From contig NC_082708.1 in assembly GCF_030144855.1 (NCBI RefSeq), positions 53,816,001 through 53,880,000 of the forward strand: DNA of 64,000 bases. Reading direction: 5' to 3'. Below, piece by piece: positions 2,862 to 52,581 of the stretch (within the stretch, counting starts at the first letter, position 1; each line of letters starts with the position of its first letter). Both the position numbers and the translations under genes were made by a program. Under the pieces are notes generated by a model, which worked only from the letters and a program-made list of their open reading frames with translations, was not told where the DNA came from and did not search any database. The stretch is from Hypanus sabinus. Lineage: Eukaryota.

Positions 2862-5800
2862 CTAAAAATAAGAATGGGCACATAAGTGTCTAGTTGTAAA
2901 GAGGTAGCCAAAGGATCCTTTCCAAGCAAAGCACAAATTACTGAACGTTAGCTACTGACTCTTACCATTTATTCAAATCAAATGAAAAATTATATCCACC
3001 CCATTTAAATATACTCATAAATCAGCATTCATAACACATTAATAACCCAAAGAAATCATAATTAATACCATGCTGTTAAATGGTAATACCAGTATTTCTG
3101 AATGATAAAATGAAAATGCTTTGCCTTTATGACTACTGTTAAAATTTAAAATTCCCAGTGTTCAGATTTCCCCTTGTGCCTACCTAGGACTTCTCTAATC
3201 CAATCAGATTCTTGAGATTCTAATTTAATTTTTCTTGTGGACAATACAAGTTTATTCAATCATTGTGCCTGCAAGTAACTACTAGACTTCAGAATTGCAA
3301 GAAAGGCAGTTCCATAAAGAGAAACTGGATTATACTACACTAGGTACGTGCATTTCCTGTAGTCATCCTACCAAAAATAATGAATTTCCAGAAAAAAAAA
3401 TGAACAATGACATCAGAATTTCAGTGCAAGAGATTGAAACTTTATAATGGAAAAGCAGATCAATTTTGTTTTAAATCGAAAGGAACTCTGCAGAAAATTC
3501 TTTCATGTGATAAAATATGCATTAAGAATGCCTTTAACAAAGAAAATTGTTTGGAAATTCTTTTGAACAATGGTTGTGAAAACTTTTCTACAGAGTGGAC
3601 TTAAAAAGCACTCAGCCAGAAGTGATGACGCCAAGTTTGAGAAGTTATCAGAAAGGGAATACTGTGTGGCTAGGGTGGTTTTCCTTCTAAGAGCAGAAGG
3701 ATAATTGTGGAAGAATATCTAGCAAGAAATAGGTGTACAAAGGAGACAATGTGATCAAAGGCTGTTTTCAGTTTTCAGATAGAGTGACTTACCAGGTTGT
3801 GGTCTATTAAATAGAGTCTGCTTGGATTTATCTTCAGTTGCAAAAGCAGTTTCCACACATTCTGCTGTTGAATTTGAAAACAAGTTGGCCATTGACGAGA
3901 GAGATGCAGCTGCTTTACTAAAATCAAATCCACCATTAGCAACATCCTGCGGTTTATTCTTTACAGCAAAGGAGTCACTTTGCACTTGGTCTTTTAACGT
4001 TGAGCCTGTACTTTTAAAACTGAAACCAAAGGATCCAGCTGCTGAATTACCTAAAGTGAAGGGTCTCTCATTCTCACTGCTGAAAATGGTTTTCATAGAA
4101 GCACATCCAAATACGAACTTTAATGGAGGTGCTTCTGTCAAGCTAGTATTCGCTGACTTGACCGCACTATTTGAAATTGAAACATTACTATTTGTTTGCT
4201 CTGTCGTTTCCTTAATAGTCTCCTCTATCATTGACACTGAAATCTTACAAGGAGATTCCCTTGGGGTAGTTTCCCTTGAAGACAATGGTGTAACTAATGT
4301 CCCTTGTTCTTGAGCCTTCTTGGCTTCTTCAAAGAGGTCTCTGAAAGAGTTAGCAACCTCTTGTTGCTTAAAACGCACAGCTAACTGTTCCACCTTTGCC
4401 ACATCATCTGCAAAATCCATTACACTCCAAACAAAAGCTTTCTCAGTTCCTTTCATGGGCTCAATTTTTATATCTGGTGTCAGCCAGTGATTGGCACAAA
4501 TTTTCAACACCTGATCCCTTCTCATAACAATCCGAACTTTTTTGGTATCATAATTTTGTAAAATTTTCAGGTCCCCTATCCCCCTCTCTTTCCACTGGAC
4601 CATTTCCTTATCATAACGGTAAAGTTTAGCTCTGTGACAGAAGATAACTTGCTCATTTTCCTCTCCTGTTGCTACATCAATCAAATCAGGCAATGGAATA
4701 ACTGGTTCAAAATGCTGTATGTCCTTTTCTTCCTCTTGGCCAAATTCTGAGTCTTCATCTGTACCCACAGACAAACCACTCTGATTCAACTTCGGAGATT
4801 TTAATGGACTCAAACAGGGTTGGAAATTAAAATTAAAACCAGTTGCTGTATCACCAAAACGGAAAAGGTTTTTCCTCACTGGACTGCTAGTGTCAGGAGG
4901 TCCATACCCAGTGCTAGATACACTAGTATCCAAAGCTTCTTCACGTAGATCATAATTATCCCACTCCAAAGTAGGTCCAGTACTTTCAGAATGTGGTTTA
5001 ATTACTAAACCAGATGTACTGCTGCTTTCAGATACAGAACTCAATACATTCCCTTCATCCTGCAAGCTTCCTTTCTCATCTTTCAAGAAGTGTTTCAGGT
5101 CTTTTAAACCATTTTTCATTTCTTCAGCTTTCTGTATTAGCCGAGCAGTCTTACCATTGTCCAATAGTTTATGAGGTGTCTGTAGTGGTATATCCAACAG
5201 CAATCTTTGGAATTCCTCAAATTTTTCTTTAAACTCTTCAGCTAATTCAGGTGTTTTAAACTTTGCTGCTAGCTGCTCTGCCTTTGCCTCACCATCTGAA
5301 AAGTCACTAGCCAACCACATCCATGCCCTATCAGAGCCCATTAAGGGTTTGAGATTCATTGTTGTAGTTATCCAGTGATTTGCGCACACTTTTAAAACTT
5401 GCTCTCGACGCATTATTACTCGAAGCCGGCCATTGGCTTTGTTTTGGAGAACTTTGAGGTTTCCAACACCCCGCTCCTTCCACTGGCTGCTTTCTGAATC
5501 AAATCTAAATAGCTTAACTCTCTGTGAATAAAGTACCAATTCATCTTCTTCACCAGTAATCAGATCTACTTTTTCAGGCATAAGAACCACAGGTTCAAAA
5601 TGAATATTATCCCCCTCTTCAGTTTTGTACAGTTCATCATCTTCATCAGCAGAAGTAGCTGTTGTACATGTTGAAAACAATTGCTGACCTACTCCTTCAA
5701 AACCTTTGAAATTAGGATCTTTAGAGCCAAATTGAAAACCTTTATCTGCAGACTTTGCTAAATCAGCAAAAGTAGAGACATTCATATCATTACCTAGAAT

Positions 5801-8800
5801 AAAATCTTGACTTTGGTTTGAAATGGCAGAGTTTGGAACTTGATCTTTGTCTGATTGTGCAGTGATTCTGTCCCTCTCCTTTTGCTCAGCAAAGGCTTTT
5901 AAGAAGAGTGCAGCTGATCCTTGCTGACTAGTTTTTTTAGCAGAATCTTTGCATGTATCTGGCAAACCAAATGTGAAGTTACCACCTGAACTAGCTGAAG
6001 AAAATGTAAATGCAGGACTGGAAAACTGTCTTGAAGACTGAGATGATGATGGCTCAACCTTGAAGCCTGCAGTATTGTTTACACTACCATTCCCAAATTT
6101 AAAACTACTTGCTGGGAAGTTAACTTTAAATCCAAATTCAGGTGCATCTGATTTGGGGCAAGCTCGGCCAAGAGCAAATGTTGTGGTAGAAGCTGCTGAA
6201 ACTCCAACTGTTTTATTGCTTGCTCTGGGTGCCTGACAAGCAACACAGTTTGTCTTTTCTGGTTCATTTCTCACACAACATGAATCACAATCCCATTGTC
6301 CTTCCTTTCTGGAAAATAATTCTGCCAAGCTTTGTGTGGCGGGTTTCTCACTGGATGCTGGTTGGGCAACTGTAGTAACAACTGGAATTTTGTCATTGGG
6401 TTTCGATGCCTGACAGCTCATACATTTTGTCACTTCCAAATTTCTCTGCAAAGTGCTGCAATCACACTGTCCTTTTCTGGCAAATATTCCTTGTAATGTG
6501 TCTTGTGTCAAAGTAGATGTTCTCTCACTGAAGGCTGACTGGCCAAATGAAGTAACAATAGGAAGTTTGCCATTAGGTTTGGGTGCCTGAAAGGTTGCAG
6601 ATTTTGCATCAGTATTGGTAAGTTTGTCACCAAACCCTCTTGGCTTGGTAAAAGCTGTAATCTTCTCAGGTCCTTCAACTGCACTTCCATTTTGCACTAA
6701 TTTTGCAACTTCCATTTCTGAAGCAAAAGGTAAACTTTGTTTTCTATTAGTGACATTAGGGCTTTGGCAAGATTGACACATGGAATCTGAAGCAGTGTTT
6801 CGTACAAAACACGTGCTGCAATCCCACTCACCAGGTTTCTTAAAAAACTTTGCAGCAAATCCAGAGTCTTCAGTAGACTTAACAGTACCCAAGTTCACCA
6901 TATCAGACTTCAACTTGATTCCCATTTTCTGTTCTTGACCAAACAAACTGCTCAGTTTTAATTCATCATCTTTAACCAAGTTTTGTGCTTCTTCAAATTT
7001 GGCTTTGAACAATGCAGCCTCATCTGCTGTTTTAAAGCGAACAGCAAGTTGCTCAAATACTTGCTTTTCATCAGAATAATCCAAGGCACACCAGACCCAT
7101 GATTTATCAGATCCTTTATTTGGTTTCAACTTCATATCTGCAGTAATATAATGGTTTGCACAGATCTTAAGAACCTGATCTCGCCTCATTAGAAGCCGGA
7201 TTTTCCTGGAAGTCCTGTGTTGCAGTAGTTTTATGTACCCAATGCCTCGTTCCTTCCATTCTTTGGTCTCAGTGTCAAAACGGAAGAGTTTAGCTCTGTT
7301 GGAAAACAATAGTTCCTCATCTTCTTCTCCTGTTTTTACATCTACTTTGTCAGGAAGTGGTACAACTGGGTCAAAATGTGGCCCATCATCTTCATCAGGT
7401 ACACTGTCGCGATCACTTTCACCATCCTTGTCTTCAGCATTATCTCCACAAGTTGCTGGCTTGCCAGTATCCTTGAAACCAAATACCTGATTACTCAATA
7501 CATTGAATGTATTCTTATTTTGTCTTTGAGGCAAAACGTCATTAAAAGAATGCTGCTCTCCTTGGGAAAAGGGACTCTCTCGACTGTGCATTCCTTGTGT
7601 AGACATTTGCCCCAGAATCAAATCATTTTTTATAGGCCTTCCAGCAGTTAAAATTCCTAGGAGACTATCACTAGCAGATGATGGTGGTGCCTGGGCTTTC
7701 ATCTGTGGTGATGAGAATGTAAAATCTCCCTCATTATTCTTGAAATTTGAGTTAAATTTAAATGTTGTTGCTGGTGTTGAGTGCAATAGTCCAGTAACCA
7801 ATGAATTCTTTGCAGCTTCATTTTGTATTTGTTGATTAGGTGTTCCAAATCGTCCTTTAGTTTCCATAGGTTTCATAGGTTGCATTCCTACAGGCGGCTT
7901 AGTAAAGTAACCAGGCTCTGGCAAAGGTGGGTTTGTGCTTGTTTGTGGAATGCCATGGTTGTAGTAGTCTTCACCAAATGGAGAAAGCAATCCAGTTGCA
8001 GGAGATTCAAAATGCAATTGTGGCCCATACATATCCTGTGAATAAATACATGCCGAATTGGTTTGAATAGGAGGTGTGTGAGCTTGCTGCTGATATCCAT
8101 ACACAGACTGTTGCGGTGGAATCCGACCAATTCCATATGTAGGAGTCTGCTTCAAAACAAAAAAAAACACAATGTTAATCTGTCAATACATATACTTTTC
8201 CAAATAGAGAATATCACTTTGGTTACCTTGGTTGGAGCCACGTTGGTTGCTGCTCTAAGATGATATTGGGAATTGTACATTGGAGATTGATTGTAGAACA
8301 CAGTTGATCCTGAAGTAGCAACTGAGAGAATGTGTTTTAGTTTGTATCTTCATAAAATATCTCACTGACAAATATTAATGATTCACTCTATTATGGCATT
8401 CAAATTGCTTCAGGTAAAGTATAGTTTAAACTATTTGGCAAAGCTAAAACAATAATCTGAAGGCCGAGTAAATTAAATTAGAAGCCCTTGAGCCTGTTGC
8501 TGCCATTACTGGGTAATGTTTCTTAGTAAAAATTCTTTACAGTTTGCCTGAACAATCAAAAAATGAATTACAACTAAATTTATTTAAAAATATGAATGGC
8601 ATGCTATCACAAATTAAAAACTCAGTTGTAAACTACATTCAAGTGTTATGACCACAAAATTTGTTACAATTTAAATAATTATTTAAAGCCAAGTTATATT
8701 GCTAATTGAACATAAACAGATCAAGCAACACACAAGAAATGCTGGTGGAACGCAGCAGGCCAGGCAGCATCTATAGGGAGAAGCGCTGTCAATGTTTCGG

Positions 8801-23800: not shown

Positions 23801-26800
23801 TCGCTAGTAAAAATTAAGAAAGAATTTAAAGAAAATTAAAACAACTTGCATATACTTTATAAATAAAGTGTTGGAAAAAACATAAGTATCTGAAAGGAAG
23901 GGTGCAAATACCCAAGATCAAATAAATAAGCCTTGCAACAGGCTTACAAAGAGGGAAACGTAGAACTTTAGGACAAGTTAACCTTTTATCCATCATTTTG
24001 CACAAGAGAACACCAATATTTTAATATCTTAAGTTGCAACTCTGAAGAGATAAGAAATAGCAGTCATAACTGCTAGCTCAGAATAATATACTGTCAGGAT
24101 TAAGAAAAATGAAATGCAAGACAGACAACCAAACACTAATGCAGAGTTGGTTTAAAGAGCAACCTCTTATTATTTTGCTTCTTAATTTTTCTGAACTATC
24201 CCCAATTCATTATCAATTTATTTAGGATATTTAGAGAGTCAGCTGGACTCCGTAAATTTCATAGAAAGTAATAACGGAGCGTGATCAGAGATAGCTATAA
24301 TATCATAGTTACAACCGATTACCATTGGAATAAAACAAGAGTCTAAATAATCAATTCTTGAATAAGAGTGATGATTAAATTGGATTAAATTGATTTATCA
24401 TACTCCAGTAGCCTCAGTGGTTACCAATAATCAAAGATCTCCCTTTTTTCGCCTATTTCGGGGCACTAGACAGGGATGTCCTCTTAGTCCATTACTATTT
24501 AACATTGCCTTAGAACCTTTGGCAATTGCCATCAGACAATCACAGGATATTTTGGGTATTAATCGTGGGACAGATATTCATAAGTTATCTTTGTATGCAG
24601 ATGATTTATTACTATTCATTTCTAACCCGGAGAAATCCATCCCAGCAGTTTTATCATTATTGGCTCAATTTAGTGAGTTTTCTGGGTATAAGTTAAATCT
24701 TAATAAAAGTGAATTGTTTCCATTAAATAAACGGGTCCCAATTTATGGAAATTTACCTTTTAAATTAGTTAATGACTCTTTTACTTATTTAGGGATCAAA
24801 ATCACAAAGAACCATAAAGATTTGTTTGGATTTAATTTTTTACCCTTAATTGATCAGATTAAAGGTTTGTTTACTAGGTGGTCACCTTTGTCTCTATCTC
24901 TAATAGGCAGGATTAATGCTATTAAGATGGTTATTTTACCTAAGTTTTTATATATTTTTCAAGCGATACCAATTTTTATCCCGAAATCTTTTTTTACTAA
25001 TGTTGACTCTAAAATTTCTTCATATATATGGCAGTATAAAAATCCCAGGTTAGGTAAAACATATTTACAGAAGACTAAAAAGGAAGGCGGGTTAGCATTA
25101 CCTAATTTCAGATTTTACTATTGGGCAGTTAATATTAGATATTTGTTATGTTGGTTGAAAGATGGGGGTGGATCTTTTGGCCCTTGTTGGGTGAGTTTAG
25201 AAACTAAATCGGTATCAGCTTATGCTTTGGGTTCTATTTTAGGGACTTCTCTCCCTTTTGCTCTTTCTAAATTGCCGAAACGAATCGACAACCCGATAGT
25301 TAAACATACATTGCGTATATGGTTTCAATTTCGGAGATTTTTTGGGTTGACTCAATTCGTTTTAAATAGTCCTATTGTATCTAATTGTTTTTTTCACCCT
25401 TCCATTATAGATCAAGCTTATTCAGCTTGGAAAACTAAGGGATTACTAAGATTTTCTGATTTATTTTTAGATAATTGTTTCATGTCTTTTGAACAATTAT
25501 CCAACAGATATAACTTGCCGAGATTTCATTTTTTTAGATATTTACAGATTAGACATTTTTTAAGTTCTGTACTCTCTATGTTTCCAAATTTTGTGCCTTC
25601 AGATACTTTGGAGAGTTTATTTGAATTAGACCCTTTTCAAAAAGGGCTTATTTCAAAACTTTATAATATAATTATGAAGATACGTTCAGAGCCCCTTTAT
25701 AAGACTAAACAGGATTGGGAAAGAGAGCTTAGTTTTAGTATTTCTAGTGAGAATTGGGATAGAATTCTTCAATTAGTTAATACATCATCGTTATGTGCCA
25801 AACATTCACTAATACAATTTAAGGTTGTACATAGGGCCCATATGTCCAAGGATAAATTAGCTCATTTTTACTCTCATATAAGTCCTATTTGTGATAGATG
25901 TCATTCTGAAATTGCGTCTTTAACTCACATGTTTTGGTCGTGTTCATTTTTGGAGAAATATTGGAAAGATATTTTTGATATTATATCTGCGGTTTTGAAT
26001 ATTGATTTACAACCTCATCCTATTACCGCAATTTTTGGTTTACCAATGTTAGATTCACAGCATTTATCTTCTTCAGCCCGTCGAATGATTGCATTTCTAA
26101 CTTTGATGGCTAGAAGATCTATATTGTTGAATTGGAAAGAAATTGATCCTCCCACTGTATTTAATTGGTTCTCTCAAACTATGTTATGTTTAAATTTAGA
26201 AAAAATTAGAAGTGGTACTTTTGAGACCTATTAAATTTGAAAAGTTATGGAGACCATTTATTCAACATTTTCATATGATGTAATATGACCCTTTGCCAAG
26301 TACATTTGATTTCCCAGCTTTTAGCTTATGGATTTTGAGAGGACCGGAAGTGACGGCATTGATGAATACTTATTTTTGTGAGATATTATAAACAGCCCAC
26401 TTTTTTTTTCCCTTCTCTTTTGTTTGTTTTTTTTTTCTTTTATATTACTTATTAGCTATAGTTATTAGATTAGATTAGTTAGTTCTGCATTATATAAATT
26501 TTTTTTTGTTTTTTTTCTTTCTTTTTTCTGTTTTTTTTATATTATACATTATGAAATATTTAGATTTACTATGTCCATACATATATCTTATGGCTTATGT
26601 CTTGGTAAACTCATTTATATTGTAACTATTATGTATGTTTTTTTTTATATGTAATGGAATGTGTATGTTGGTAATTTCTTTATCAATATATCATCTGTAT
26701 TCTGTCCATATTATTAATATTAATAAAAAGATTTAGAAAGAAAAAAAGAAAGAAAGGATATTTAGCACACAAAACTCTCCACCATAAATGATGATGCGAA

Positions 26801-29800
26801 TTATTTAGCACACCCAATTCCCTACTTTTATTTAGACTATTACCTCAATCAGCTTTCGAAAGATCATACACTTGTTACATAGCTTTCCAGTAACTAACAA
26901 CATACCCATGCCAGCTCCTCTTCATGACACTATTTGTCACCTTTGTTTGGCCTGGTTTCGCATAATATGCTTTTCATTGAATGTCCATTGAGTTAGTGTT
27001 ATGTTGTGCTATTCTACTGTGGTATTTTGACAAGTTACTGCACCTTAGAGGCAGTCATTGGCTGTGAATGGCATCAAGTTAATTTTTGAACATTATTCTC
27101 TAGGTTATCCAACTACCACAAATCCTTTGTCTCATTGCACGTTTATTTAAATCTGGAAGCTTATAGCTGTTTGCAGCAACAAACTATGCTCAATTATAGC
27201 TGCTATTTAGATAGATGTTTATACATTCCATGCTGTTAAATAAATCTGGCTCATTAGTTATCTCTGTTTACAATAAGGCTTGCTATCTTTTTGCACATAA
27301 TGCTTTTTTCCTAATGCGACTTATGTAGAAGTTATTATTTTAAACTCTGATTCTAACCAGGTACAGCTGCTACCAAAAGGCCTCTATGCAATTTCTGGAG
27401 AATCTTGAACACTATTCTTAATTCCAAGGATAGTCATGCTGTTTAACTATTTCTTTACCCTAATCACAGAGTCTAATAGTCAAATGTTATCATCTTTACT
27501 TTCACTCTTGTACAACCTAGTATTTTTAGTTCCCAGTTATGATAATCTTGGAGCAACATTTTAATAACATGCCAAGCCCTTTTAAATCACATTCAAGTCA
27601 GCAATTCATACTTCTACAGTTGTTACAGCTTTCTCAAGTCAGATCATTGTAAAATTCAGTTTTCCCAATGCTTGCCCAATTTTTGATTATAGTCGGCCCT
27701 CCTTATCTGCGAGGGATTGGTTCTAGGACCCCCTGCGGATTCCAAAAAACTCAGATGCTCAAGTCGCTTATTTAACCAGTCTCAATGTGGTGGACACTAA
27801 GACCCGGCGGAGGTCTGAATCCACAGTGTTTCTGATCACAAAAGTAATCACTATCATGATTGAAAATAAAGTGGAAATAATAAAGCGATTGGAGAGAGGT
27901 GAAACGCCATCGGTCATTGGAAAATCGTTAGGCTACAATCGGTCAACGATCAGAACAATTTTAAAGGATGAAGTGTGAATAATGGAGCGTGTGAAAGGCC
28001 CTACCCCGATGAAAGCTACAATTATTGCAAAGCAATGCAGTGATTTAATTATTGAAATATAAGTGTTTTATATGCATAGAAAGGTAAAATATATACTATA
28101 AGACAAACGTTTGACTAACTGACGCTAAATAAAACCAGATGTACCTGTAAGATGTACTTAGTAAGAGAACTTCCGGTTTTTTTCGATCCCGATTCNNNNN
28201 NNNNNNNNNNNNNNNNNNNNNNNNNNNNNNNNNNNNNNNNNNNNNNNNNNNNNNNNNNNNNNNNNNNNNNNNNNNNNNNNNNNNNNNNNNNNNNNNNNNN
28301 NNNNNNNNNNNNNNNNNNNNNNNNNNNNNNNNNNNNNNGCTCGAACAAGTGCTGGGTTTTCTCGATTCATGGTTGGTTGAATTCGCGGATGCGGAACTCG
28401 CAGATAAGGAGGGCCGACTGTATTTGCCTACCCTCTTGATTTTTGTTTGCATGTATTATTAATAACATTTCTCATTGCCTTCATTTATTAGCTCTCAGTG
28501 ATCAACTCGTTTATCCATTCTACAAGCACTCTGGACCTAACTCAGTTATGATAGTGCTCACCAATGTTACCATTCCTGCCTCTGCTAGAAAGAGTCAGCA
28601 CCACATGAAATGGAATTTTCACCCCCTTGTTACTGAGTTCAATGATCATCTTCTTACTCATTCCTTGTAAGAATTTCCAGGTGACGTATTAGTCAAAAAA
28701 AAATACTTCCAGCTTTAATTCCTACTAGACTCTGAAAAAGAAACCACCTTATTCTTTTCAGTATTATTAATGCCAACATGGACCACAACTGATGATCTTC
28801 CTTTCTCTCCACCAATATTCCTACAACACCTCTAAGAATCCCACACCATGGCATCATACTTCTAATATAGCATGTCACCAGTTCTCTTCGAGGGATTGGA
28901 AACGTAAAGGGTGAGCAGTTTCAAGTTCTTGAGTGTCATCTTCCCTGAGGGAACTCTCCTGGCCCAACACATTTATGCAATTAAAAAGACACAACAGAGG
29001 CTGCATTTCATAAGGAGTTTGAGGAGAATTCCTAGGTCAAAGACATTTGCAAATGTCTACAAATGTGCCAAGGAGAACATTCTAACTGCTTGCATCAACA
29101 TCTGGCACGAAGGGACCACTATACAGGATTACAGAAAGCTGTAGAAAATTGTAAACTAGCCAGATCTATCTTGGGTACTAGTCTGCCAAGAATTCAAGAC
29201 ACCCTTAAAAGGTGATGCCTCAAAAAGGCAGTATTGACCAATGAGGAACCCCATCATCCCAGACATACTCTCTTCTCATTGCTACCATCAAGGAGCCTGA
29301 AGACACAAGTCAACATTTCAGGAATAATTTCTTCCCCTCTGCCATCAGATTTCTGAATGGATAATGAGCCCATGAACACTACCGATGTTCACTGTTTCTT
29401 CTTTCCTCTTTGCATTAATATACATATATTTATATATTAAACAATGTATTCATTGCAATTTAGTTTTTGTTATGTAATGCAATGTACTGCTGCTGTAAAG
29501 CAACAAATTTCACAGCATATTAAACCTGATTCAGATGTACCACATAGGACTAAGTATACATATATGGCAATGACCAGTTCATAGGATGACAGTTATTACC
29601 AAATCTTATGTTTTAAAAACAAATGTTTTACAATATATTTTGGTGGTGCCACATGTTAAAACAAATTCTTGATTTAATTTCGTTCATATTTTTTAAGAAT
29701 TGATTTGCATGCAATATAATTTCATCAAGCATGCCAAGCCCAAAATAATATTCTTATTAAATGGTTTTATTTAACTAAATCTGTATTAAGAATTTCTATA

Positions 29801-44241: not shown

Positions 44242-46835
44242 TGCCCCTCTCACCGCCAGCCAGATGAGGTCTTGGTGCCTGTTGGTGAGGTCTGGCGATG
44301 AGGCATTTTGCCAGATGAACTGGATGGTCTGCTCAGGGAACCACTCCACTGTGTCCATCTCATCCTTCTCCTGCAGTGCCTGCAGGACCTTACATGCTGA
44401 CCACTGCCTGATGGCCCTGTGGTCAAAGGCGTTGACCTGAAAGAACTTCTCTACGAAGGACAGGTATGCCAGCAATGACCAGCTGACAAGGGTGTTGCGC
44501 GGGAAAGGGGCCAGACCCATCCTTTTTAGCCAGGGCGACAGGTAGAATCTGGCATGTAGTGGTACTTGGTGCCCACGTACCTGGGATCCACACACAACCT
44601 GATGCAGCCACACACGAAGCTGGCCATCAGGGTGAGGGCAACATTGGAGACGTTTTTGCCCCCGTTGTCCAGGGGCTTGTGCATGGTGGTCCATCTAACC
44701 CGCTCCATCTTGGATCCCCAGACGAATCTGAAGATGGCGGGGACTGGCCACACCTGCGCCAAGTACAGCAGCCCTGAGAGCACCTCACACCTGATGACTA
44801 GGTTCTTGCCCGCTATCGATAGGAAGCGCCCTCCCCACAGCCCCAGTTTCTGTTTCACCTTGGCAGTCCGCTCCTGCCAGTTCTTGTTGCACGCCTCAGC
44901 CCCTCTGAACCAGATCCCCAACACCTTCAGGTGATCAGCCCTGATGGTGAAGGGGACGCTGGATCGGTCTGGCCAATTGCCAAAGAGCATGGTTTCGCTC
45001 TTCGTGCGGTTGACCCAGGCCCCTGACGTCTGGTCTAACTGTTCGCAGATGCTGATCAGCCTGCGAACTGACCTCGGATTGGAGAAGAAGACGGTGACGT
45101 CGTCCATGTACAGGGAGGTTTTGACTTGTGTCCCTCCACTGCCTGGCAGCGTCACCCCTCTTATGCCCCCATCCCTCCTGATGGCTTCAGCAAAGGGTTC
45201 CATGCAGCACACGAACAAGACGGGAGAGAGGGCAGCCCTGCCTGACTCTAGACCTGATGGGGAAGCTGTCTGTTTCCCACCCGTTGACCCGGACTGTGCT
45301 ACAGATGTCCATGTAGAGCAGTTTGATCCAATTCCAGATTCCCTCCCCAAATCCCATTTTGGAGAGTATGTGTGCGATATCCTGTCGAAGGCTTTCTCCT
45401 GGTCCAAGCTGACCAGGCAGGCGTCCACCCCCCTGTCCTGCACGAAGGCGATGGTGTCCCTCAACAGCATGAGGCTGTCTGAGATCTTCCTGCCCGGTAC
45501 AGCATAGGTATGGTCCGGGTGGATCCCCTGCTCTAGTGCAGACTTGACCCTGTTGGCGATAGCCTTGGACAGGATCTTGTAGTCCACATTCAGGAGTGAG
45601 GTGGGCCTCCAATTTGTAATGTCTTCCCTCTCCCCCTTCTCCTTATAGATGAGGGTGATGATGCCCTTCTGCATGGATTTGGACATGTTGCCTGCCAGAA
45701 GCGTAGTGTTGTACATTTCCAGCAGGTCGGGGGCCACCTGGTTCCACAGAGCCAAATACAACTCGACCGGTAAGCCGTCGCTTCCGGGAGTCTTACCTGA
45801 CTCAAAGGAATGGACGGAGTCAATCAGCACCTCCAGGGTCAGTGGCTGCTCCAGACTCTCCCGCTTGTCGTCGTCTAAGACCTGCGTGATAGACGACAGG
45901 AAGTTGCGGGAGGTTGTGGAGTCTGTGGCCTTTTCTCCGTACAGACTGGCATAGAAGGACCTGCAGATCCTCAGTATGTCTGTCTGCGAGGACGCGACTG
46001 AGCCGTCCTCTTCCTTAAGGTTGTGGATCACAGAGCTCCCCCTGTGCACCTTTTGGAAGAAGAATTGTGAGCACGTCTCGTCCTGCTCCATGGTTTGGAC
46101 CCTCGATCGGAAGATGATCTTGGAGGTCTCAGTGGCAAAGTGCTGAGCCTGCTGGCCCTTCACCTCCTGTAGTTCCTCCCTGACATCCACCCCCCTTGAC
46201 TGCAGAAGGAGGAGTTGCTGCAACTCTGTCTGGAGTTTACGCAGTTCCCTCTGCCCCTGCCTTGCTTTCTGGATACCCTTGTGGATGAAGAACCTCTTGA
46301 TGTTCTCCTTGGTGACTTCCCACCAGTGAACCAGGGAATCAAAGAAGGCTTTCAAGGTTCTCCAACCTGTGTACTCCTTCTCTAGTTTCTCGATGTTCTC
46401 TGGGGTCAGCAGCTTGACATTCAGCTTCCATGTCCCCTTCTCTGCCTTCTGGTCCTCCAGCAGGTGGCAGGTGGCTCGCAGGAGGCAGTGGTCAGAGAAG
46501 AGCACTGGCGTGATGTCGGTGGTTCTGACTGTGAGGGGCTCTGACAGGATGAGGAAGTCAATCCGGGAATGGGCTGAACCGTCCGATCGTGTCCAGGTGG
46601 CTTGCGGCTGAGCTGTCCGATTGTGTCCAGGTGGCTTGCGGCTGAGCTCCACCTGTGGGGGTGCCAAAGGCATCGCGCAGCTTGGCTGTCTTTACCGTAT
46701 CCGTCAGGAGTCTGGAGGTACTGTCCAGCCTGCCATCAGCGCTGCCGGATTATCCAGCCGCATCAGTGGTGCAGTTGAAGTCTCCGGCCAGAACGACCGG
46801 CCGGGATGTCACCAGCAGTGGTGGGAGCTGCCATG
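44242..46835 (-). mobile_element. Tx1-type (L1 clade) LINE ORF2 fragment, truncated at both ends
   Basis: AGDFNC, SRIDF, SDH, KTPGSDGLP, DQEKAFD, YMDD, WLAVRGAL; GC-rich; frameshifts, including a 34-bp tandem duplication at 46581-46648. Confidence 0.92.
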
Positions 46836-48011: not shown

Positions 48012-50966
48012 TGTTGGATTAGACGGTATAATTGTTATTTTCTTTACTGTTTAACTTTCCTATACCTGCTTGTATTTCGTACAATTACCTATGTATATGC
48101 AATTGGTCAGGTGTGTCCCCTAGTGCTTACATTTCTTTGTGTTATTCTGGTATCACATTGTTTGAATAGGAGCTATCTGATTGGTTAACTCTTATCTAGA
48201 AATTTGAATGGAATATTTGTTATCTATGGCTCACCATCTTTCTTCTTTCTCCTTCTTTGTTCTTTCCTGCTGACTTTTTCTTTCTTACTACTCTCTTTTC
48301 CCAATTCCTTTGCTGTATTAGTGTTTAATAAAATGATCATTCAACAACAAGTTTCATGCCTTGTTCTTGACGACTGAAAGAACCTTAGATCAGAAACATC
48401 AGAATTTAACACTTTGGCATTATTGGCAAGGATGGTTGCAAAGATTTAAGGACTTGGAAGAATCCAAGATGAAATGAAAACTTTTGAGTGCAAATTTAAA
48501 AGGAAAGAGCTTCCTGTATAATTCCAAATCATTCAAGAAAACTGCCTAGTTCTTTTTCAATAACCATCAGTGGAAGTTTAGGAATAATGAAGCCACTATA
48601 CATTGCTATTCTGAAAAAAGAATCAGATCTGAAAAATCAGACCAGGACTGAAATTAATATGTTGCTCAAATTAAATTTGTACAAGCCAGTGGAGTACAGA
48701 GACATCTTTTGGTTGTAATTTAATGCTTTAAAAAAGTCTAGATTGCGATCTAGTGAGGGAAATATTGACATTTGCAAACCAAAAATATCAATTGCATGCC
48801 TAGAGAATTTCAGTTATCGTCCTAAAATAAAATATCAACTGCAATCTTATAAAATTTCGGGTGTGATCCAATAATATTTCAACTGCAGTCCTATAAAGAT
48901 TTCAACCCAATCTTACACTATTTCAGTTGGGATCTAATAATATTTCAAGACTGCATTTCAAGTGATAAAAAATATATACAAATTAATGTTACACGGTATT
49001 GAATTAAGGCAATGGCCAAACTCATGAAACCTATCACAGAATCTCCAATTACATTTGAACAGATGACTGAGCATCTGAGCTCTTACCTGATTAAAATATC
49101 TTAATTTGATAAAGTCTGGATGAAGAATACCATCAATGTTAAGTCTATTAAGAACACATGTGATAAAATCCAGAGAATGCCCAAATGAAAGGAAAAAAAA
49201 CTAGAATGTGTGAGTTAGAGATACAACCATGTGGTCAGTTTGATTGAGTGAGAAGTTTAATGGATGAGTAAAGAAGTTAACTAAGCAGTTGGGAGAGAAA
49301 TGTGAAATATGTAATAAATTACAGAAACAGTGTGATAGAGACAGTAATATATCTAAAGAGCAAATGTCTGCACTGAGTAAAAAAGCAACGTAAGTGTAAT
49401 TGAATCAAAGTGCACTGTACAGTGCTTCGAAACAAAGTGAAGTAATATGAGAAATTTTAGCAGGGAATTCAAGTGGATGGTCATGCCAGTGACACGCTCT
49501 CTTGGGAAACACCCCCTACATTGGACACAGTGGCATCATCTAAACTCTGAGGAATCAGAGCATATGTTGGGCAGTTCTCTGAGATGGAGCTAACATCCAA
49601 ACTCCAGAAACTACAGGATGGATATGACATGGATACTATAGCAGTCTCTAGCAACTCAATTGAGGATGACAATAATGAAACAATGGGATTGGTAGCTAGG
49701 TAATGGCTTGATCCAGTAAAGACCAAGGAACTAAAGACAAGCAGGACTGAAAATGGAACCTATGAAAGAAGACTGGAGGTGGATTATCGAGTTGTTAATC
49801 AATGTATTTACAAGCTAACCCCTAGAGTGGTAATCCATTAACTAATTTCAATGTTCTGAAGCCATCACACAAATGGTTTACAGTTATTGGAATGTCAACC
49901 ATTTTTGGCTTTCGAGGTTGATGGTCAAAAATACCAGTGGATGAGGCTACCACAAGTTCTCCACAACAGTCCCATTGTCCATTCTATGGCTTTGAGACAG
50001 CATTTGAAGGACTTAATAAATCCATAATAGAATAATAACCATTAAAAAATCAATAAAAGACTGTACCAACTTGGGCATTCAATCAGTTTGCAAAAGACCT
50101 AAATTGCAAATACAAAAAGAGAGAAATAAAAATATTAAATAAATAAGCAATAAATATTGAGAATGTGAGATGAAGAGTCCTCGAAAGTAAACCCATAGGT
50201 TGTGGAAATACTTCAATGATGAAGTGAAGTTGAGAGAAGCTATCCCTTTTGGTTCAAGAGTCTGATGGTTGAGGGGTAATAACCTCCTGAACCTGGAGGT
50301 GTGAGTGCTGAGGCTCCTGTACCTTCTTCCTGGTGGCTGCAGTGAGAAGAGAGTGTGTCCTGGGTGGTGGGCATCCCTGTTGATGGATGCTGCTTTTCTG
50401 GAACAATGTTTCATGTAGCTGTGTTCAGTGGTGGGGAGCACTTTCCCTGTGATGGTCTGAGTCATATCCACTACTTCTTCCATTCAAGGGCATTGGTGTT
50501 TCCATACCAGGCTGGGATGCAGGCAAAGAATATACTCTCAACATCTACAAAAGTGTGTCAAAGTTTTCAATGTCATACTGAATCTTTATAAACACCTAAG
50601 GAAATAGAGGCGCTACTGTGCTTTCTTTGTAATTGCACTTACATGCTGGGGCCCATGACAGGTCCTCTGAAATCATAACTTTAAGGAATTTAAAGTTGCT
50701 GACCCTCTGCACCTCTGATCCTCAGGTGAGGAATAGCTCATGGACCCCTGGTTCCTCCTCCTGAAGTCAATAGTCAGCTCCTTGGTCTTGCTGACATTGA
50801 GTAAGAGGTTGTTGATATGACACCACTCAGCCAGATTTTCAATCTCCCTCCTATTTACTGATTCATCACCACCTTTGATCTGGCCTACTCTCATCAGCAA
50901 ACTTGAATATGGCATTGGAGCTGTGCTTAGCTGCACCATCATAAATGTAAAGCGAGTAGAGTGGGG

Positions 50967-51843
50967 CAGTGGCCCCCAACCACTGGGCCGTGTACCTGTA
51001 CCGGGCTGCAAAGCATGTGCTACCAGGCCGCAAGGAAACGATATGATTTGGCAATACGAAGCGATACGAGTCAGCTGCCCCTTTTCCTCATTCCCTGTCA
51101 CGTCCACTGTTGAATGCACGCAAGGTCATTACACACGCGAGGTCATTACCCACGCAAGGTCATCAGTCACCTAAATGTAGTGATACCCTTGCACCAGGGA
51201 TCACTGGTTGGCCTTGGGAAGTGCTGTTGCTACTGGCCTGGAGCGCGGACGGATGGGTGCCGCTCTAAACCTGCTTAGCACACCAAATGGGGTGCCCTGG
51301 TGGGGAACCTGGTGCTAAAATATTCACAGACGACCTAATTCGGGCTCAGGGTTTCGTAAGTAGCTGAGCAGCTACCTCACTGCGATCTACTTAAAGTCAT
51401 CCCTCGAACCAAACATTTGTCAGCCACTCTCTCTGGACTGCAACCACCATGGCCCCATAACGGGGACCTCCAGCCTTCTCCTTGTCCTCTCACTGGTGCA
51501 ATGATTTTATATGTTCATACGAGGAAAATATATGCTGTGTGTTTAATATCCAAACTTTACTTAAAATATTATGATGCTATTGGCTTATAAGTGAGTTATA
51601 ATTGACTTTTCACTATATTCATGTGAGGAAAATATGTGCTGTGTGTTGAATATTAAATTCATTGGATAAACCCTTTTAGAAACGAAATTGAGTGTATTAG
51701 CCATCTATAAGTGACTCATAGTTGACTTATCATCTATATTCCGGTCATGATTAATACCGCCTCTCCCCCCCCCCCCCCCCCGGTTAGCCGGTCTGTAAGA
51801 GTATTAAACCGGTCCGCAGTGCAGAAATGGTTGGTGACCCCTG
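50967..51843. mobile_element. Non-autonomous hAT (Charlie-like) transposon carrying a 28S rRNA fragment
   Basis: CAGTGGCCCCCAACC...GGTTGGTGACCCCTG termini; 8-bp TSD GAGTGGGG/GAGTAGGG. Confidence 0.85.
51170..51421 (+). pseudogene. 28S rRNA 3'-terminal fragment (non-functional copy)
   Basis: GGGGAACCTGGTGCTAAA...GACGACC...GGGTTTCGTAAGTAGCTGAGCAGCTACCTCACTGCGATCTACTTAAAGTCATCCCTCGAACCAAACATTTGTC follows the conserved metazoan 28S 3' end; clearest at 51299-51421. Confidence 0.88.
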
Positions 51844-52581
51844 GAGTAGGGGGCTCAGCACACAAGCCTTGTGGTGCACCTGTGCTGATGGAGATTGTGG
51901 AGAAAATATTGTTGCCAGTCTGCCAGTATTGTCTGCCAGTGAGGAAATTGAGGAACCAATTGCATAAAGAGATATTGAGGCTGAGGTTTTGAAACTTATT
52001 GATTAGTTTTGAGGGGATGATGGCATTGAGAGCATGATCATGATGTGCTGTATTTGCTTAATTATCTGTCCTGTAAAAGTCACAAAGCAAATCTAGACAA
52101 GCGCAATTGCAGCAGGAAGTAATTTACTTCGTGAACAGAAAATTTCCCAAAGTAAGCAGGAAATCAATGAGGGTTGTGTAAAAGCTGTGAAGTCATCAGA
52201 GCCACCGACCCCAGTCCAGCAACTCCAATCTTTTCCAGGTTTGTGTAACTATGATAGAGCATGGGTTGATTCATATACTGAAATTGCCCAACTACTCAAC
52301 GATCTGTTGAACAGCAGTAAGTGCTCAGATGACCCTGTAAGTCTCAATGAAGAGCGACTGAAAGTGTTTCAAACTTTAAAGGTGACATTATGTACTACAC
52401 CTGCATTAGGAATCCCTGGTACAAGTAAACCATTTATCCTGTAGGTCAATGAGAAACATATAATGGCAGTCTTAACGCAAGATCATGGAGACCAACAGTG
52501 TTCTGTTGGTTATCACTCTACCAACTCTGATTCAGTACATCAATAGCTCCTCAAAGACTGAGGGAGGAATTCAAATGGCTA

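What the first reader, a model, noticed from the sequence alone, without database searches (positions are those of the whole stretch)
50959..51851. hAT DNA transposon carrying the 3' end of 28S rRNA
Seen: between Charlie-like TIRs with an 8-bp TSD lies ~250 bp colinear with the 28S 3' terminus, ending at ...TTTGTC (51421). It is followed by a C-rich stretch, with no poly(A) or TSD of its own. Knowledge: 28S-derived repeats are known as retroposed SINE-like copies in mammals; carriage inside a cut-and-paste element is a different route. Inference: Pack-type capture of rDNA (possibly with 3' ETS) that was then amplified. Because hAT elements often transfer horizontally, the rRNA piece could act as a barcode of the genome where capture occurred, and transcribed copies could yield rRNA-related small RNAs.
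Basis: partly seen in the sequence, partly recalled or inferred. Interest (0 to 1): 0.75.

Follow-up and report, generated by a model that had tools for sequence, protein, structure and literature searches.

The report
Dead hAT transposon carrying 28S tail
This is one old, decayed copy of a many-copy cut-and-paste (hAT) transposon whose interior holds the last ~240 bases of the large ribosomal RNA gene; it is an unusual cargo moved by an ordinary route, and this scan has already met the family at ten or more other places in the same genome.

Summary
Window 50967-51843 (877 bp) is a non-autonomous hAT-type element. It has 16-nt imperfect terminal inverted repeats starting CAGTG/CAGGG and an 8-bp target-site duplication (GAGTGGGG/GAGTAGGG). 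It sits inside a LINE reverse-transcriptase fragment. Contigs from four other organisms cross the same LINE site without the element, and removing the element plus one duplication copy rejoins an RT motif in frame.

Bases 51316-51418 match the last 103 positions of the Rfam eukaryotic LSU model (33 bits, E 2e-6). Homology seems to begin near 51182 and ends at TTTGTC (51421). A 41% C stretch follows, with no poly(A).

Every part of the element is covered by tens to about 100 distinct contig variants in each of four organisms. The deepest contigs there agree with this copy's 28S tail except at two private changes, and both majority letters match the universal LSU consensus. This supports capture of the lineage's own rDNA followed by amplification. 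It does not support a one-off retrocopy or a foreign donor.

Not shown here:
- Direct linkage of arms and cargo in another full copy.
- That the post-28S stretch is the 3' ETS; the deep contigs stop near 51404-51421.
- Any small-RNA output or horizontal transfer.

The cargo is unusual, the mechanism ordinary. The scan found this family before on other DNA.

The parts
50959..50966 (.). left copy of the 8-bp target-site duplication (GAGTGGGG)
   Evidence: paralogous empty sites read GAGCAGGG once (tables 5c and 7)
50967..50982 (+). 5' terminal inverted repeat CAGTGGCCCCCAACCA (hAT-type YARNG start)
   Evidence: I3; contig X4 record 29 stops matching exactly at 50967 and runs on into a different flank (table 8)
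50983..51116 (+). 5' subterminal arm with repeated GGCCG/ACCGG motifs
   Evidence: read directly; covered by 30-86 contig variants per run (table 3)
51117..51169 (+). 17-bp tandem repeat, 2.8-3 units (CACGCAAGGTCATTACA)
   Evidence: (D2)
51182..51421 (+). 28S rRNA 3'-terminal segment (decayed). 51316-51418 is model-supported. The start near 51182 is inferred.
   Evidence: Rfam RF02543, positions 3297-3399 of 3401, 33.4 bits; depth step and majority letters
51422..51500 (+). C-rich stretch (41% C) of unknown origin; 3' ETS is possible but not shown
   Evidence: depth profile, table 2
51510..51732 (+). two AT-rich direct repeats of about 104-120 bp
   Evidence: D1, D5
51765..51781 (+). C17 run in the 3' subterminal region
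51828..51843 (-). 3' terminal inverted repeat (reverse complement CAGGGGTCACCAACCA)
   Evidence: I3
51844..51851 (.). right copy of the target-site duplication (GAGTAGGG)
50673..50958 (-). host LINE (L2-like) RT fragment, part downstream of the insertion site
   Evidence: far deeper than the element in all four runs (table 2)
51852..52060 (-). host LINE RT fragment, part upstream of the insertion site

Best explanation
Window 50967-51843 is a dead, non-autonomous member of a Charlie-like hAT family. The family's internal region was replaced once by a piece of the lineage's own rDNA: the last ~240 bases of 28S, perhaps with some sequence beyond it. The likely route (inferred) is template switching during repair of the gap left by excision, or imprecise mobilisation of an element sitting at the rDNA. 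The chimera kept both TIRs and the subterminal motifs, so a transposase supplied in trans by autonomous relatives could cut and paste it, and it multiplied (inferred). This copy landed in the RT region of a LINE fragment and made an 8-bp duplication (shown). It has since picked up at least 28 private substitutions and a roughly 14-base deletion at 51214/51215 (shown from majority letters and loose ends). The rRNA piece is passive cargo with no function for the host or the element.
For: Termini, TSD and a precise insertion are shown and by empty-site contigs in four organisms (tables 5, 5c, 7). No open frame within the element exceeds 77 aa; the 99-aa and 148-aa ORFs run out into the flank. No poly(A) or A-run is present. 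Every one of the 30 bins is covered in all four runs. Low-depth, diverged contigs lie wholly inside the 28S part: X1 record 6 (51242-51414, depth 13) and X4 record 30 (51218-51395, depth 5.7). These are dispersed copies, not the rDNA array. X2 record 23 runs from the left arm (51008) into 51204. An X1 contig joins 51152 to 51195. An X15 contig is an internal-deletion derivative, in effect joining about 51031 to 51625 (tables 5c, 8). At 51365 (T>A) and 51392 (T>G) more than 99% of the depth in all four runs carries the letter of the Rfam LSU consensus, so this copy descends from a more rRNA-like ancestor. Earlier notes of this scan describe the same architecture at ten or more other places in this genome; these are leads only.
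Against: I could not fetch a second full copy. There is none in the window. The ORF-based fetch found nothing, and neither did two metagenome scans. Linkage of arms to cargo in other copies therefore rests on short Logan contigs and equal variant counts. The run kinds and organisms are coded and unrecorded. Depth in the 28S part is 10-20 times that of the arms, which needs an additional source; I take it to be rDNA but did not show this. The capture mechanism is inferred. No autonomous partner was seen.
Confidence: 0.8

Rival explanations
1. One-off nested event: an ordinary hAT MITE copy that later received an rRNA retrocopy, or a 28S-derived SINE like mammalian SINE28, at this locus only.
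For: Only one copy is in the window. 28S-derived retroposed repeats exist in mammals (PMC4994717, listed). An 8-bp direct repeat TCACTGGT brackets 51201-51497.
Against: There is no A-run or LINE tail. The 8-mer repeat has a chance expectation of about 0.1, and its left copy lies inside the 28S-colinear part. About 100 distinct low-depth variants of the 28S part exist per organism, matching the counts for the arms. Some contigs cross from the left arm into the 28S start (tables 5c, 8). The same architecture is noted at other places in the genome (leads only).
Confidence: 0.07
2. The cargo is foreign: the element was captured in another lineage and arrived by horizontal transfer, so the 28S piece is a barcode of the donor.
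For: hAT elements are known to transfer horizontally (general knowledge). The deep contigs do not match this copy at 51264-51300, and one X15 contig of depth 972 skips 51218-51300 (table 5). The expansion-segment part therefore differs from today's abundant form.
Against: Over 51311-51404 the deep contigs of four organisms differ from this copy at only two private sites (table 3). Expansion segments evolve fast by concerted evolution, which is enough to explain the 51264-51300 mismatch. Earlier follow-ups reached the same view (s1-223200 and s1-187814; leads only).
Confidence: 0.05
3. The segment is kept because it does something for the element. Examples: a terminator or processing signal, nucleolar targeting, or camouflage from small-RNA silencing because it looks like rRNA.
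For: A second, unrelated DNA-transposon family in this genome is reported to carry the other 28S boundary, ITS2 plus the 28S 5' end (lead only).
Against: This copy's 28S part decays like the rest, with private changes at conserved LSU positions and many broken pairs in the model alignment. An internal-deletion derivative lacking the cargo exists (table 5c).
Confidence: 0.05

Closest known systems
Non-autonomous hAT (Charlie-type) elements and MITEs of vertebrates
   Same: 8-bp TSD, short TIRs starting CAG(T/G)G, CCGG-rich subterminal motifs, no transposase, many copies. From memory, untested: the termini and the C-run before the 3' end resemble the MER30-type Charlie MITEs.
   Different: About a quarter of the element is a recognisable rRNA gene fragment, rather than deleted transposase sequence or anonymous filler.
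Pack-MULE and other transduplicating DNA transposons
   Same: A host gene fragment lies between intact termini and is amplified by cut-and-paste.
   Different: The superfamily is different (hAT, not Mutator). The cargo is a non-coding multi-copy rRNA gene end, not exons. The host is a vertebrate.
Pokey/mPok piggyBac elements of Daphnia (rDNA IGS repeats inside a DNA transposon; PMC10946416, Table 2)
   Same: A cut-and-paste element carrying rDNA-derived sequence in its interior.
   Different: Pokey lives in 28S itself and carries IGS repeats. Here the cargo is the 28S 3' terminus, and this copy sits in a LINE far from any rDNA.
SINE28 and LSU-rRNA retrocopies of mammals (PMC4994717)
   Same: Dispersed 28S-derived repeats that look like rRNA to annotation and mapping tools.
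   Different: Those are retroposed, with an A-tail and LINE-type TSDs. This one has TIRs and an 8-bp TSD and no A-tail.

Membership tests
hAT superfamily (non-autonomous member) | 8-bp target-site duplication | tested here: met
   GAGTGGGG/GAGTAGGG, 7/8. Paralogous empty sites carry the 8-mer once (tables 5c, 7). The RT motif is rejoined in frame.
hAT superfamily (non-autonomous member) | short TIRs beginning 5'-YARNG | tested here: met
   CAGTG... and CAGGG..., 13/16 complementary, or 14/16 with the family majority letter at 50973.
hAT superfamily (non-autonomous member) | weak target preference nTnnnnAn | tested here: not met
   The target GAGYAGGG fits on neither strand. This is a statistical preference, not a requirement.
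hAT superfamily (autonomous element) | transposase with BED finger, RNase-H-like DDE core and hAT C-terminal dimerisation domain | tested here: not met
   No open frame within the element exceeds 77 aa; the 99-aa and 148-aa ORFs extend into the flank. The 148-aa ORF that overlaps the left end has no Pfam family. No hAT domain turned up in the seven window ORFs I scanned. The element must be mobilised in trans.
Charlie clade of hAT | transposase phylogeny, or a match of the termini to a curated Charlie consensus | not testable with these tools
   No Dfam or Repbase library is at hand. The resemblance to MER30-type termini is from memory only.
Cargo-carrying (Pack-type) DNA transposon family | host-derived fragment between the termini | tested here: met
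   Rfam LSU_rRNA_eukarya positions 3297-3399 of 3401 at 51316-51418.
Cargo-carrying (Pack-type) DNA transposon family | the same cargo in many copies with the same junctions | tested here: inconclusive
   All parts are multi-copy with similar variant counts, and a few contigs cross the left junction. No second full copy could be read.
rRNA retrocopy / SINE28-like SINE | 3' A-tail or LINE-derived tail, and variable-length TSD flanking the rRNA piece | tested here: not met
   The element has no A or T run of 5 or more. Only a chance-level 8-mer repeat was found.
Functional 28S rRNA gene | full-length LSU reaching the Rfam gathering score | tested here: not met
   Only 103 model positions match, at 33.4 bits against a cutoff of 50. 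Nothing was found at gathering level.

The most novel reading that the evidence does not exclude
The rDNA cargo is not a random filler. Two unrelated cut-and-paste families in this genome are reported to carry the two ends of 28S together with adjoining sequence: this hAT family with the 3' end, and a Tigger-like family with ITS2 plus the 5' end (earlier scan notes, untested here). That pattern would point to an rDNA-specific capture route. Either the ancestors lived at the 28S boundaries as target-specific DNA transposons and took their flanks along, or the rRNA-like interior shields the elements from small-RNA silencing.
Probability: 0.08. Interest if true: 0.6.

Novelty: new member of a known kind. 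Interest (0 to 1): 0.3.

Why it matters
The significance is mostly practical. A family like this scatters rRNA look-alikes through introns and intergenic DNA. That can mislead rRNA annotation, rRNA-depletion and read-filtering steps, and the mapping of small RNAs. It adds a vertebrate hAT example to the short list of DNA transposons with rDNA-derived interiors. The 2024 review table lists only Pokey among DNA transposons. In principle the cargo dates and places the capture event, but here it points to the host lineage. It does not reveal a new mechanism.

Tried and rejected
1. Second copy in the window: blastn of the element against the window found none, and blastn of the flanks found no paralogous empty site.
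2. Fetching other copies through spurious ORFs: the 76-aa open frame spanning the 28S end into the AT-rich part (51360-51587) shares no words with any protein in the collection. I ran no further search on this.
3. Metagenome scans: one for the 28S/post-28S junction 20-mer and one for a 23-mer of the lineage-type 28S tail both gave 0 hits.
4. Rfam on 7 kb and on the whole window at gathering level found nothing. Only the 401-base search shows the LSU hit.
5. Pfam on the short RT pieces beside the insertion found no RVT_1. Weak, ordered blastp matches to an RT ORF of the window and the SPLLYSLY...FAD motif carry that point instead.
6. tRNA scan of the element for a SINE head: none.
7. Literature: four searches found no description of a hAT with 28S cargo. 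Absence from this library is not proof of novelty.
8. Orthologous-locus dating through the RanBP2-like gene was considered and dropped. The full-length protein probably falls outside the length window of the word search, and the element lies about 43 kb from the exon.
Full report
**What is there**

Reading 50700-52100 shows an 877-bp unit at 50967-51843.
- Its ends are CAGTGGCCCCCAACCA and, on the other strand, CAGGGGTCACCAACCA, 13/16 complementary (I3).
- They are flanked by GAGTGGGG (50959-50966) and GAGTAGGG (51844-51851).
- A degenerate pattern built from the two ends occurs nowhere else in the window.
- An unbiased search for any TIR >=13/16 with a TSD >=7/8 at 300-3000 bp finds only this pair. 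Five shuffles gave 0,0,1,0,0, so the termini alone are only suggestive.

**The insertion is real and precise**

The flanks are a LINE reverse-transcriptase fragment on the minus strand.
- With the element and one TSD copy removed, one frame reads ...ACVLSPLL|YSLYIYDGAAKHSSNAIFKFADES across the site. These are the RT motifs, in the right order relative to an RT ORF elsewhere in the window (weak matches).
- Independently, Logan contigs of four runs from four differently coded organisms were laid on 50700-52100 at 80% likeness.
- The flanks are by far the most abundant part. Many contigs join 50961 or 50966 directly to 51865, with 12-16 letters between that correspond to 51852-51864 (tables 5, 5c).
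- The loose-end consensus reads ...GTAGAGCAGGGGGCTAAGCACAC (table 7). Other copies of the LINE therefore carry the 8-mer GAGCAGGG once and no element.
- One contig (X4 record 29) stops matching exactly at 50967 and continues for 65 letters unlike the window. That is a copy at another site.

**The rRNA piece**

- On a 401-base search, Rfam's eukaryotic LSU model aligns positions 3297-3399 of 3401 to 51316-51418 (33.4 bits, E 1.9e-6).
- The score is below the family's gathering score. The hit is lost on larger searches.
- Upstream of 51316 there is no model support. This is the region of a variable expansion segment.
- Very deep contigs begin to match between 51178 and 51193, where depth in X1 rises from 15.8k to 86k. 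From memory, the spacing of conserved words there fits vertebrate 28S. I therefore put the start near 51182, giving about 240 bp. This start is an inference.
- After 51421 comes a 79-bp stretch with 41% C. Next come two AT-rich direct repeats of 104-120 bp, then a C17 run, then the right end.
- The element has no A-run, and no open frame within it exceeds 77 aa; the longer ORFs listed (99 and 148 aa) run out into the flank.

**Is the cargo family-wide?**

I could not read a second full copy. There is none in the window, the ORF-based fetch found nothing, and neither did two metagenome scans.
- All 30 bins are covered in all four runs.
- At sites where this copy differs from nearly all others, the number of distinct contigs is of the same order in the arms (30-86), the 28S part (74-112), the post-28S part (40-56) and the AT-rich part (56-92).
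- Low-depth, 80-85% similar contigs lie entirely within the 28S part (X1 record 6, X4 record 30). These are dispersed copies, not the rDNA array.
- X2 record 23 runs from 51008 to 51204. An X1 contig joins 51152 to 51195. An X15 contig is an internal-deletion derivative, in effect joining about 51031 to 51625.
- Together with the absence of retroposition marks, this favours one capture followed by amplification.
- The scan's earlier notes report the same architecture at ten or more other places in this genome, and copy numbers in the hundreds to thousands. I treat those as leads. They agree with what I see.

**Whose 28S?**

- Depth over 51311-51404 is 10-20 times that of the arms, so something else, most simply the rDNA itself, lies there.
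- Those deep contigs differ from this copy only at 51365 (T>A) and 51392 (T>G) within 51311-51404, and at 51310 just upstream of it.
- Both majority letters at 51365 and 51392 are the letters of the universal LSU consensus in the Rfam alignment.
- This copy is thus a decayed descendant of a sequence essentially identical to the abundant form in four related organisms. Nothing points to a foreign donor.
- The deep form does not follow this copy at 51264-51300. Depth there falls to about 330-390 in X1 and X2, and a depth-972 contig in X15 skips 51218-51300.
- The deep form also has about 14 extra letters at 51214/51215 (table 7, X2). This is as expected for a fast-evolving expansion segment plus a private deletion.

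**The 3' ETS question**

- Depth falls from 138k (51358-51404) to 32k (51405-51451) and 11k (51452-51498) in X1. The other runs behave alike.
- The abundant form therefore does not continue into the post-28S stretch at 80% likeness.
- Three explanations are open: the spacer has diverged since capture, these contigs come from RNA, or the stretch is not ETS.
- Earlier follow-ups state that about 500-540 bp is rDNA including spacer. I could not confirm that and leave it open.

**Age**

Within the element, at least 28 listed sites are private to this copy (table 3; 189 further rows were not shown). That is at least 3.2% divergence. The changes are dominated by transitions, and one TSD position has changed. 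It is an old, immobile copy.

**Mechanism**

- Shown: hAT-type insertion with an 8-bp duplication; no coding capacity; an rRNA-derived interior; multi-copy parts.
- Inferred: capture by template switching during gap repair, or by imprecise mobilisation at the rDNA, then trans-mobilisation by an autonomous relative.
- The 8-mer TCACTGGT at 51201 and 51490 brackets most of the cargo. Its chance expectation is about 0.1, and I give it no weight.

**Comparison with what is known**

- The 2024 review of rDNA-TE interplay lists as rDNA-derived TEs the 5S-headed SINEs, SINE28, Cassandra/TRIM elements and the IGS repeats of piggyBac Pokey (PMC10946416). It lists no hAT and no cartilaginous fish.
- Four literature searches found no description of this family.
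- It is a new member of a known kind: a cargo-carrying non-autonomous DNA transposon.

**Context and compliance**

- The window also holds a RanBP2-like large exon (3755-8170, minus strand) and two LINE RT ORFs.
- The N run at 28196-28338 was not touched.

Noticed in passing
window 3755-8170 (-): A 1471-aa open frame with three RanBP1 domains (E 3e-158) and RanBP-type zinc fingers: the large exon of a RanBP2-like gene. The hAT copy lies about 43 kb upstream on that strand. It may be in an intron or in the 5' flank.
   Followed up: partly
window 24390-26234 (+) and 44526-46673 (-): Two long LINE ORFs with RVT_1; the first also has zf-RVT. A 34-bp tandem repeat (2.3 units) sits at 46572-46648, inside the second ORF.
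   Followed up: partly
window 50747-50934 and 51875-52060: The LINE RT fragment that hosts the insertion is the most abundant thing on the stretch in all four runs, 15-70 times the summed depth of the hAT arms.
   Followed up: partly
window 51201-51208 and 51490-51497: An exact 8-bp direct repeat TCACTGGT brackets most of the 28S piece plus the C-rich stretch. Its chance expectation is about 0.1, and there are no TIRs inside it.
   Followed up: partly
window 51508-51714: In run X4, a 2284-letter contig (record 31) matches only this AT-rich repeat module, at its positions 1421-1627. The module may also occur in a longer element or another context, such as an autonomous relative or the rDNA spacer.
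   Followed up: no
window 51264-51300 and 51214/51215: The very deep, rDNA-like contigs do not match this copy at 51264-51300 and carry about 14 extra letters (CGGGCAGCCGGCGG) after 51214. The cargo's expansion-segment part therefore differs from today's abundant form.
   Followed up: partly
same genome, other pieces (earlier scan notes s1-228281, s1-191509, s1-191507, s1-236312): A second, Tigger/pogo-like DNA-transposon family is reported to carry the 28S 5' end plus ITS2. If so, both boundaries of 28S have been captured by unrelated cut-and-paste families in one genome.
   Followed up: no
window 28196-28338: A run of 143 N (assembly gap or masked).
   Followed up: no
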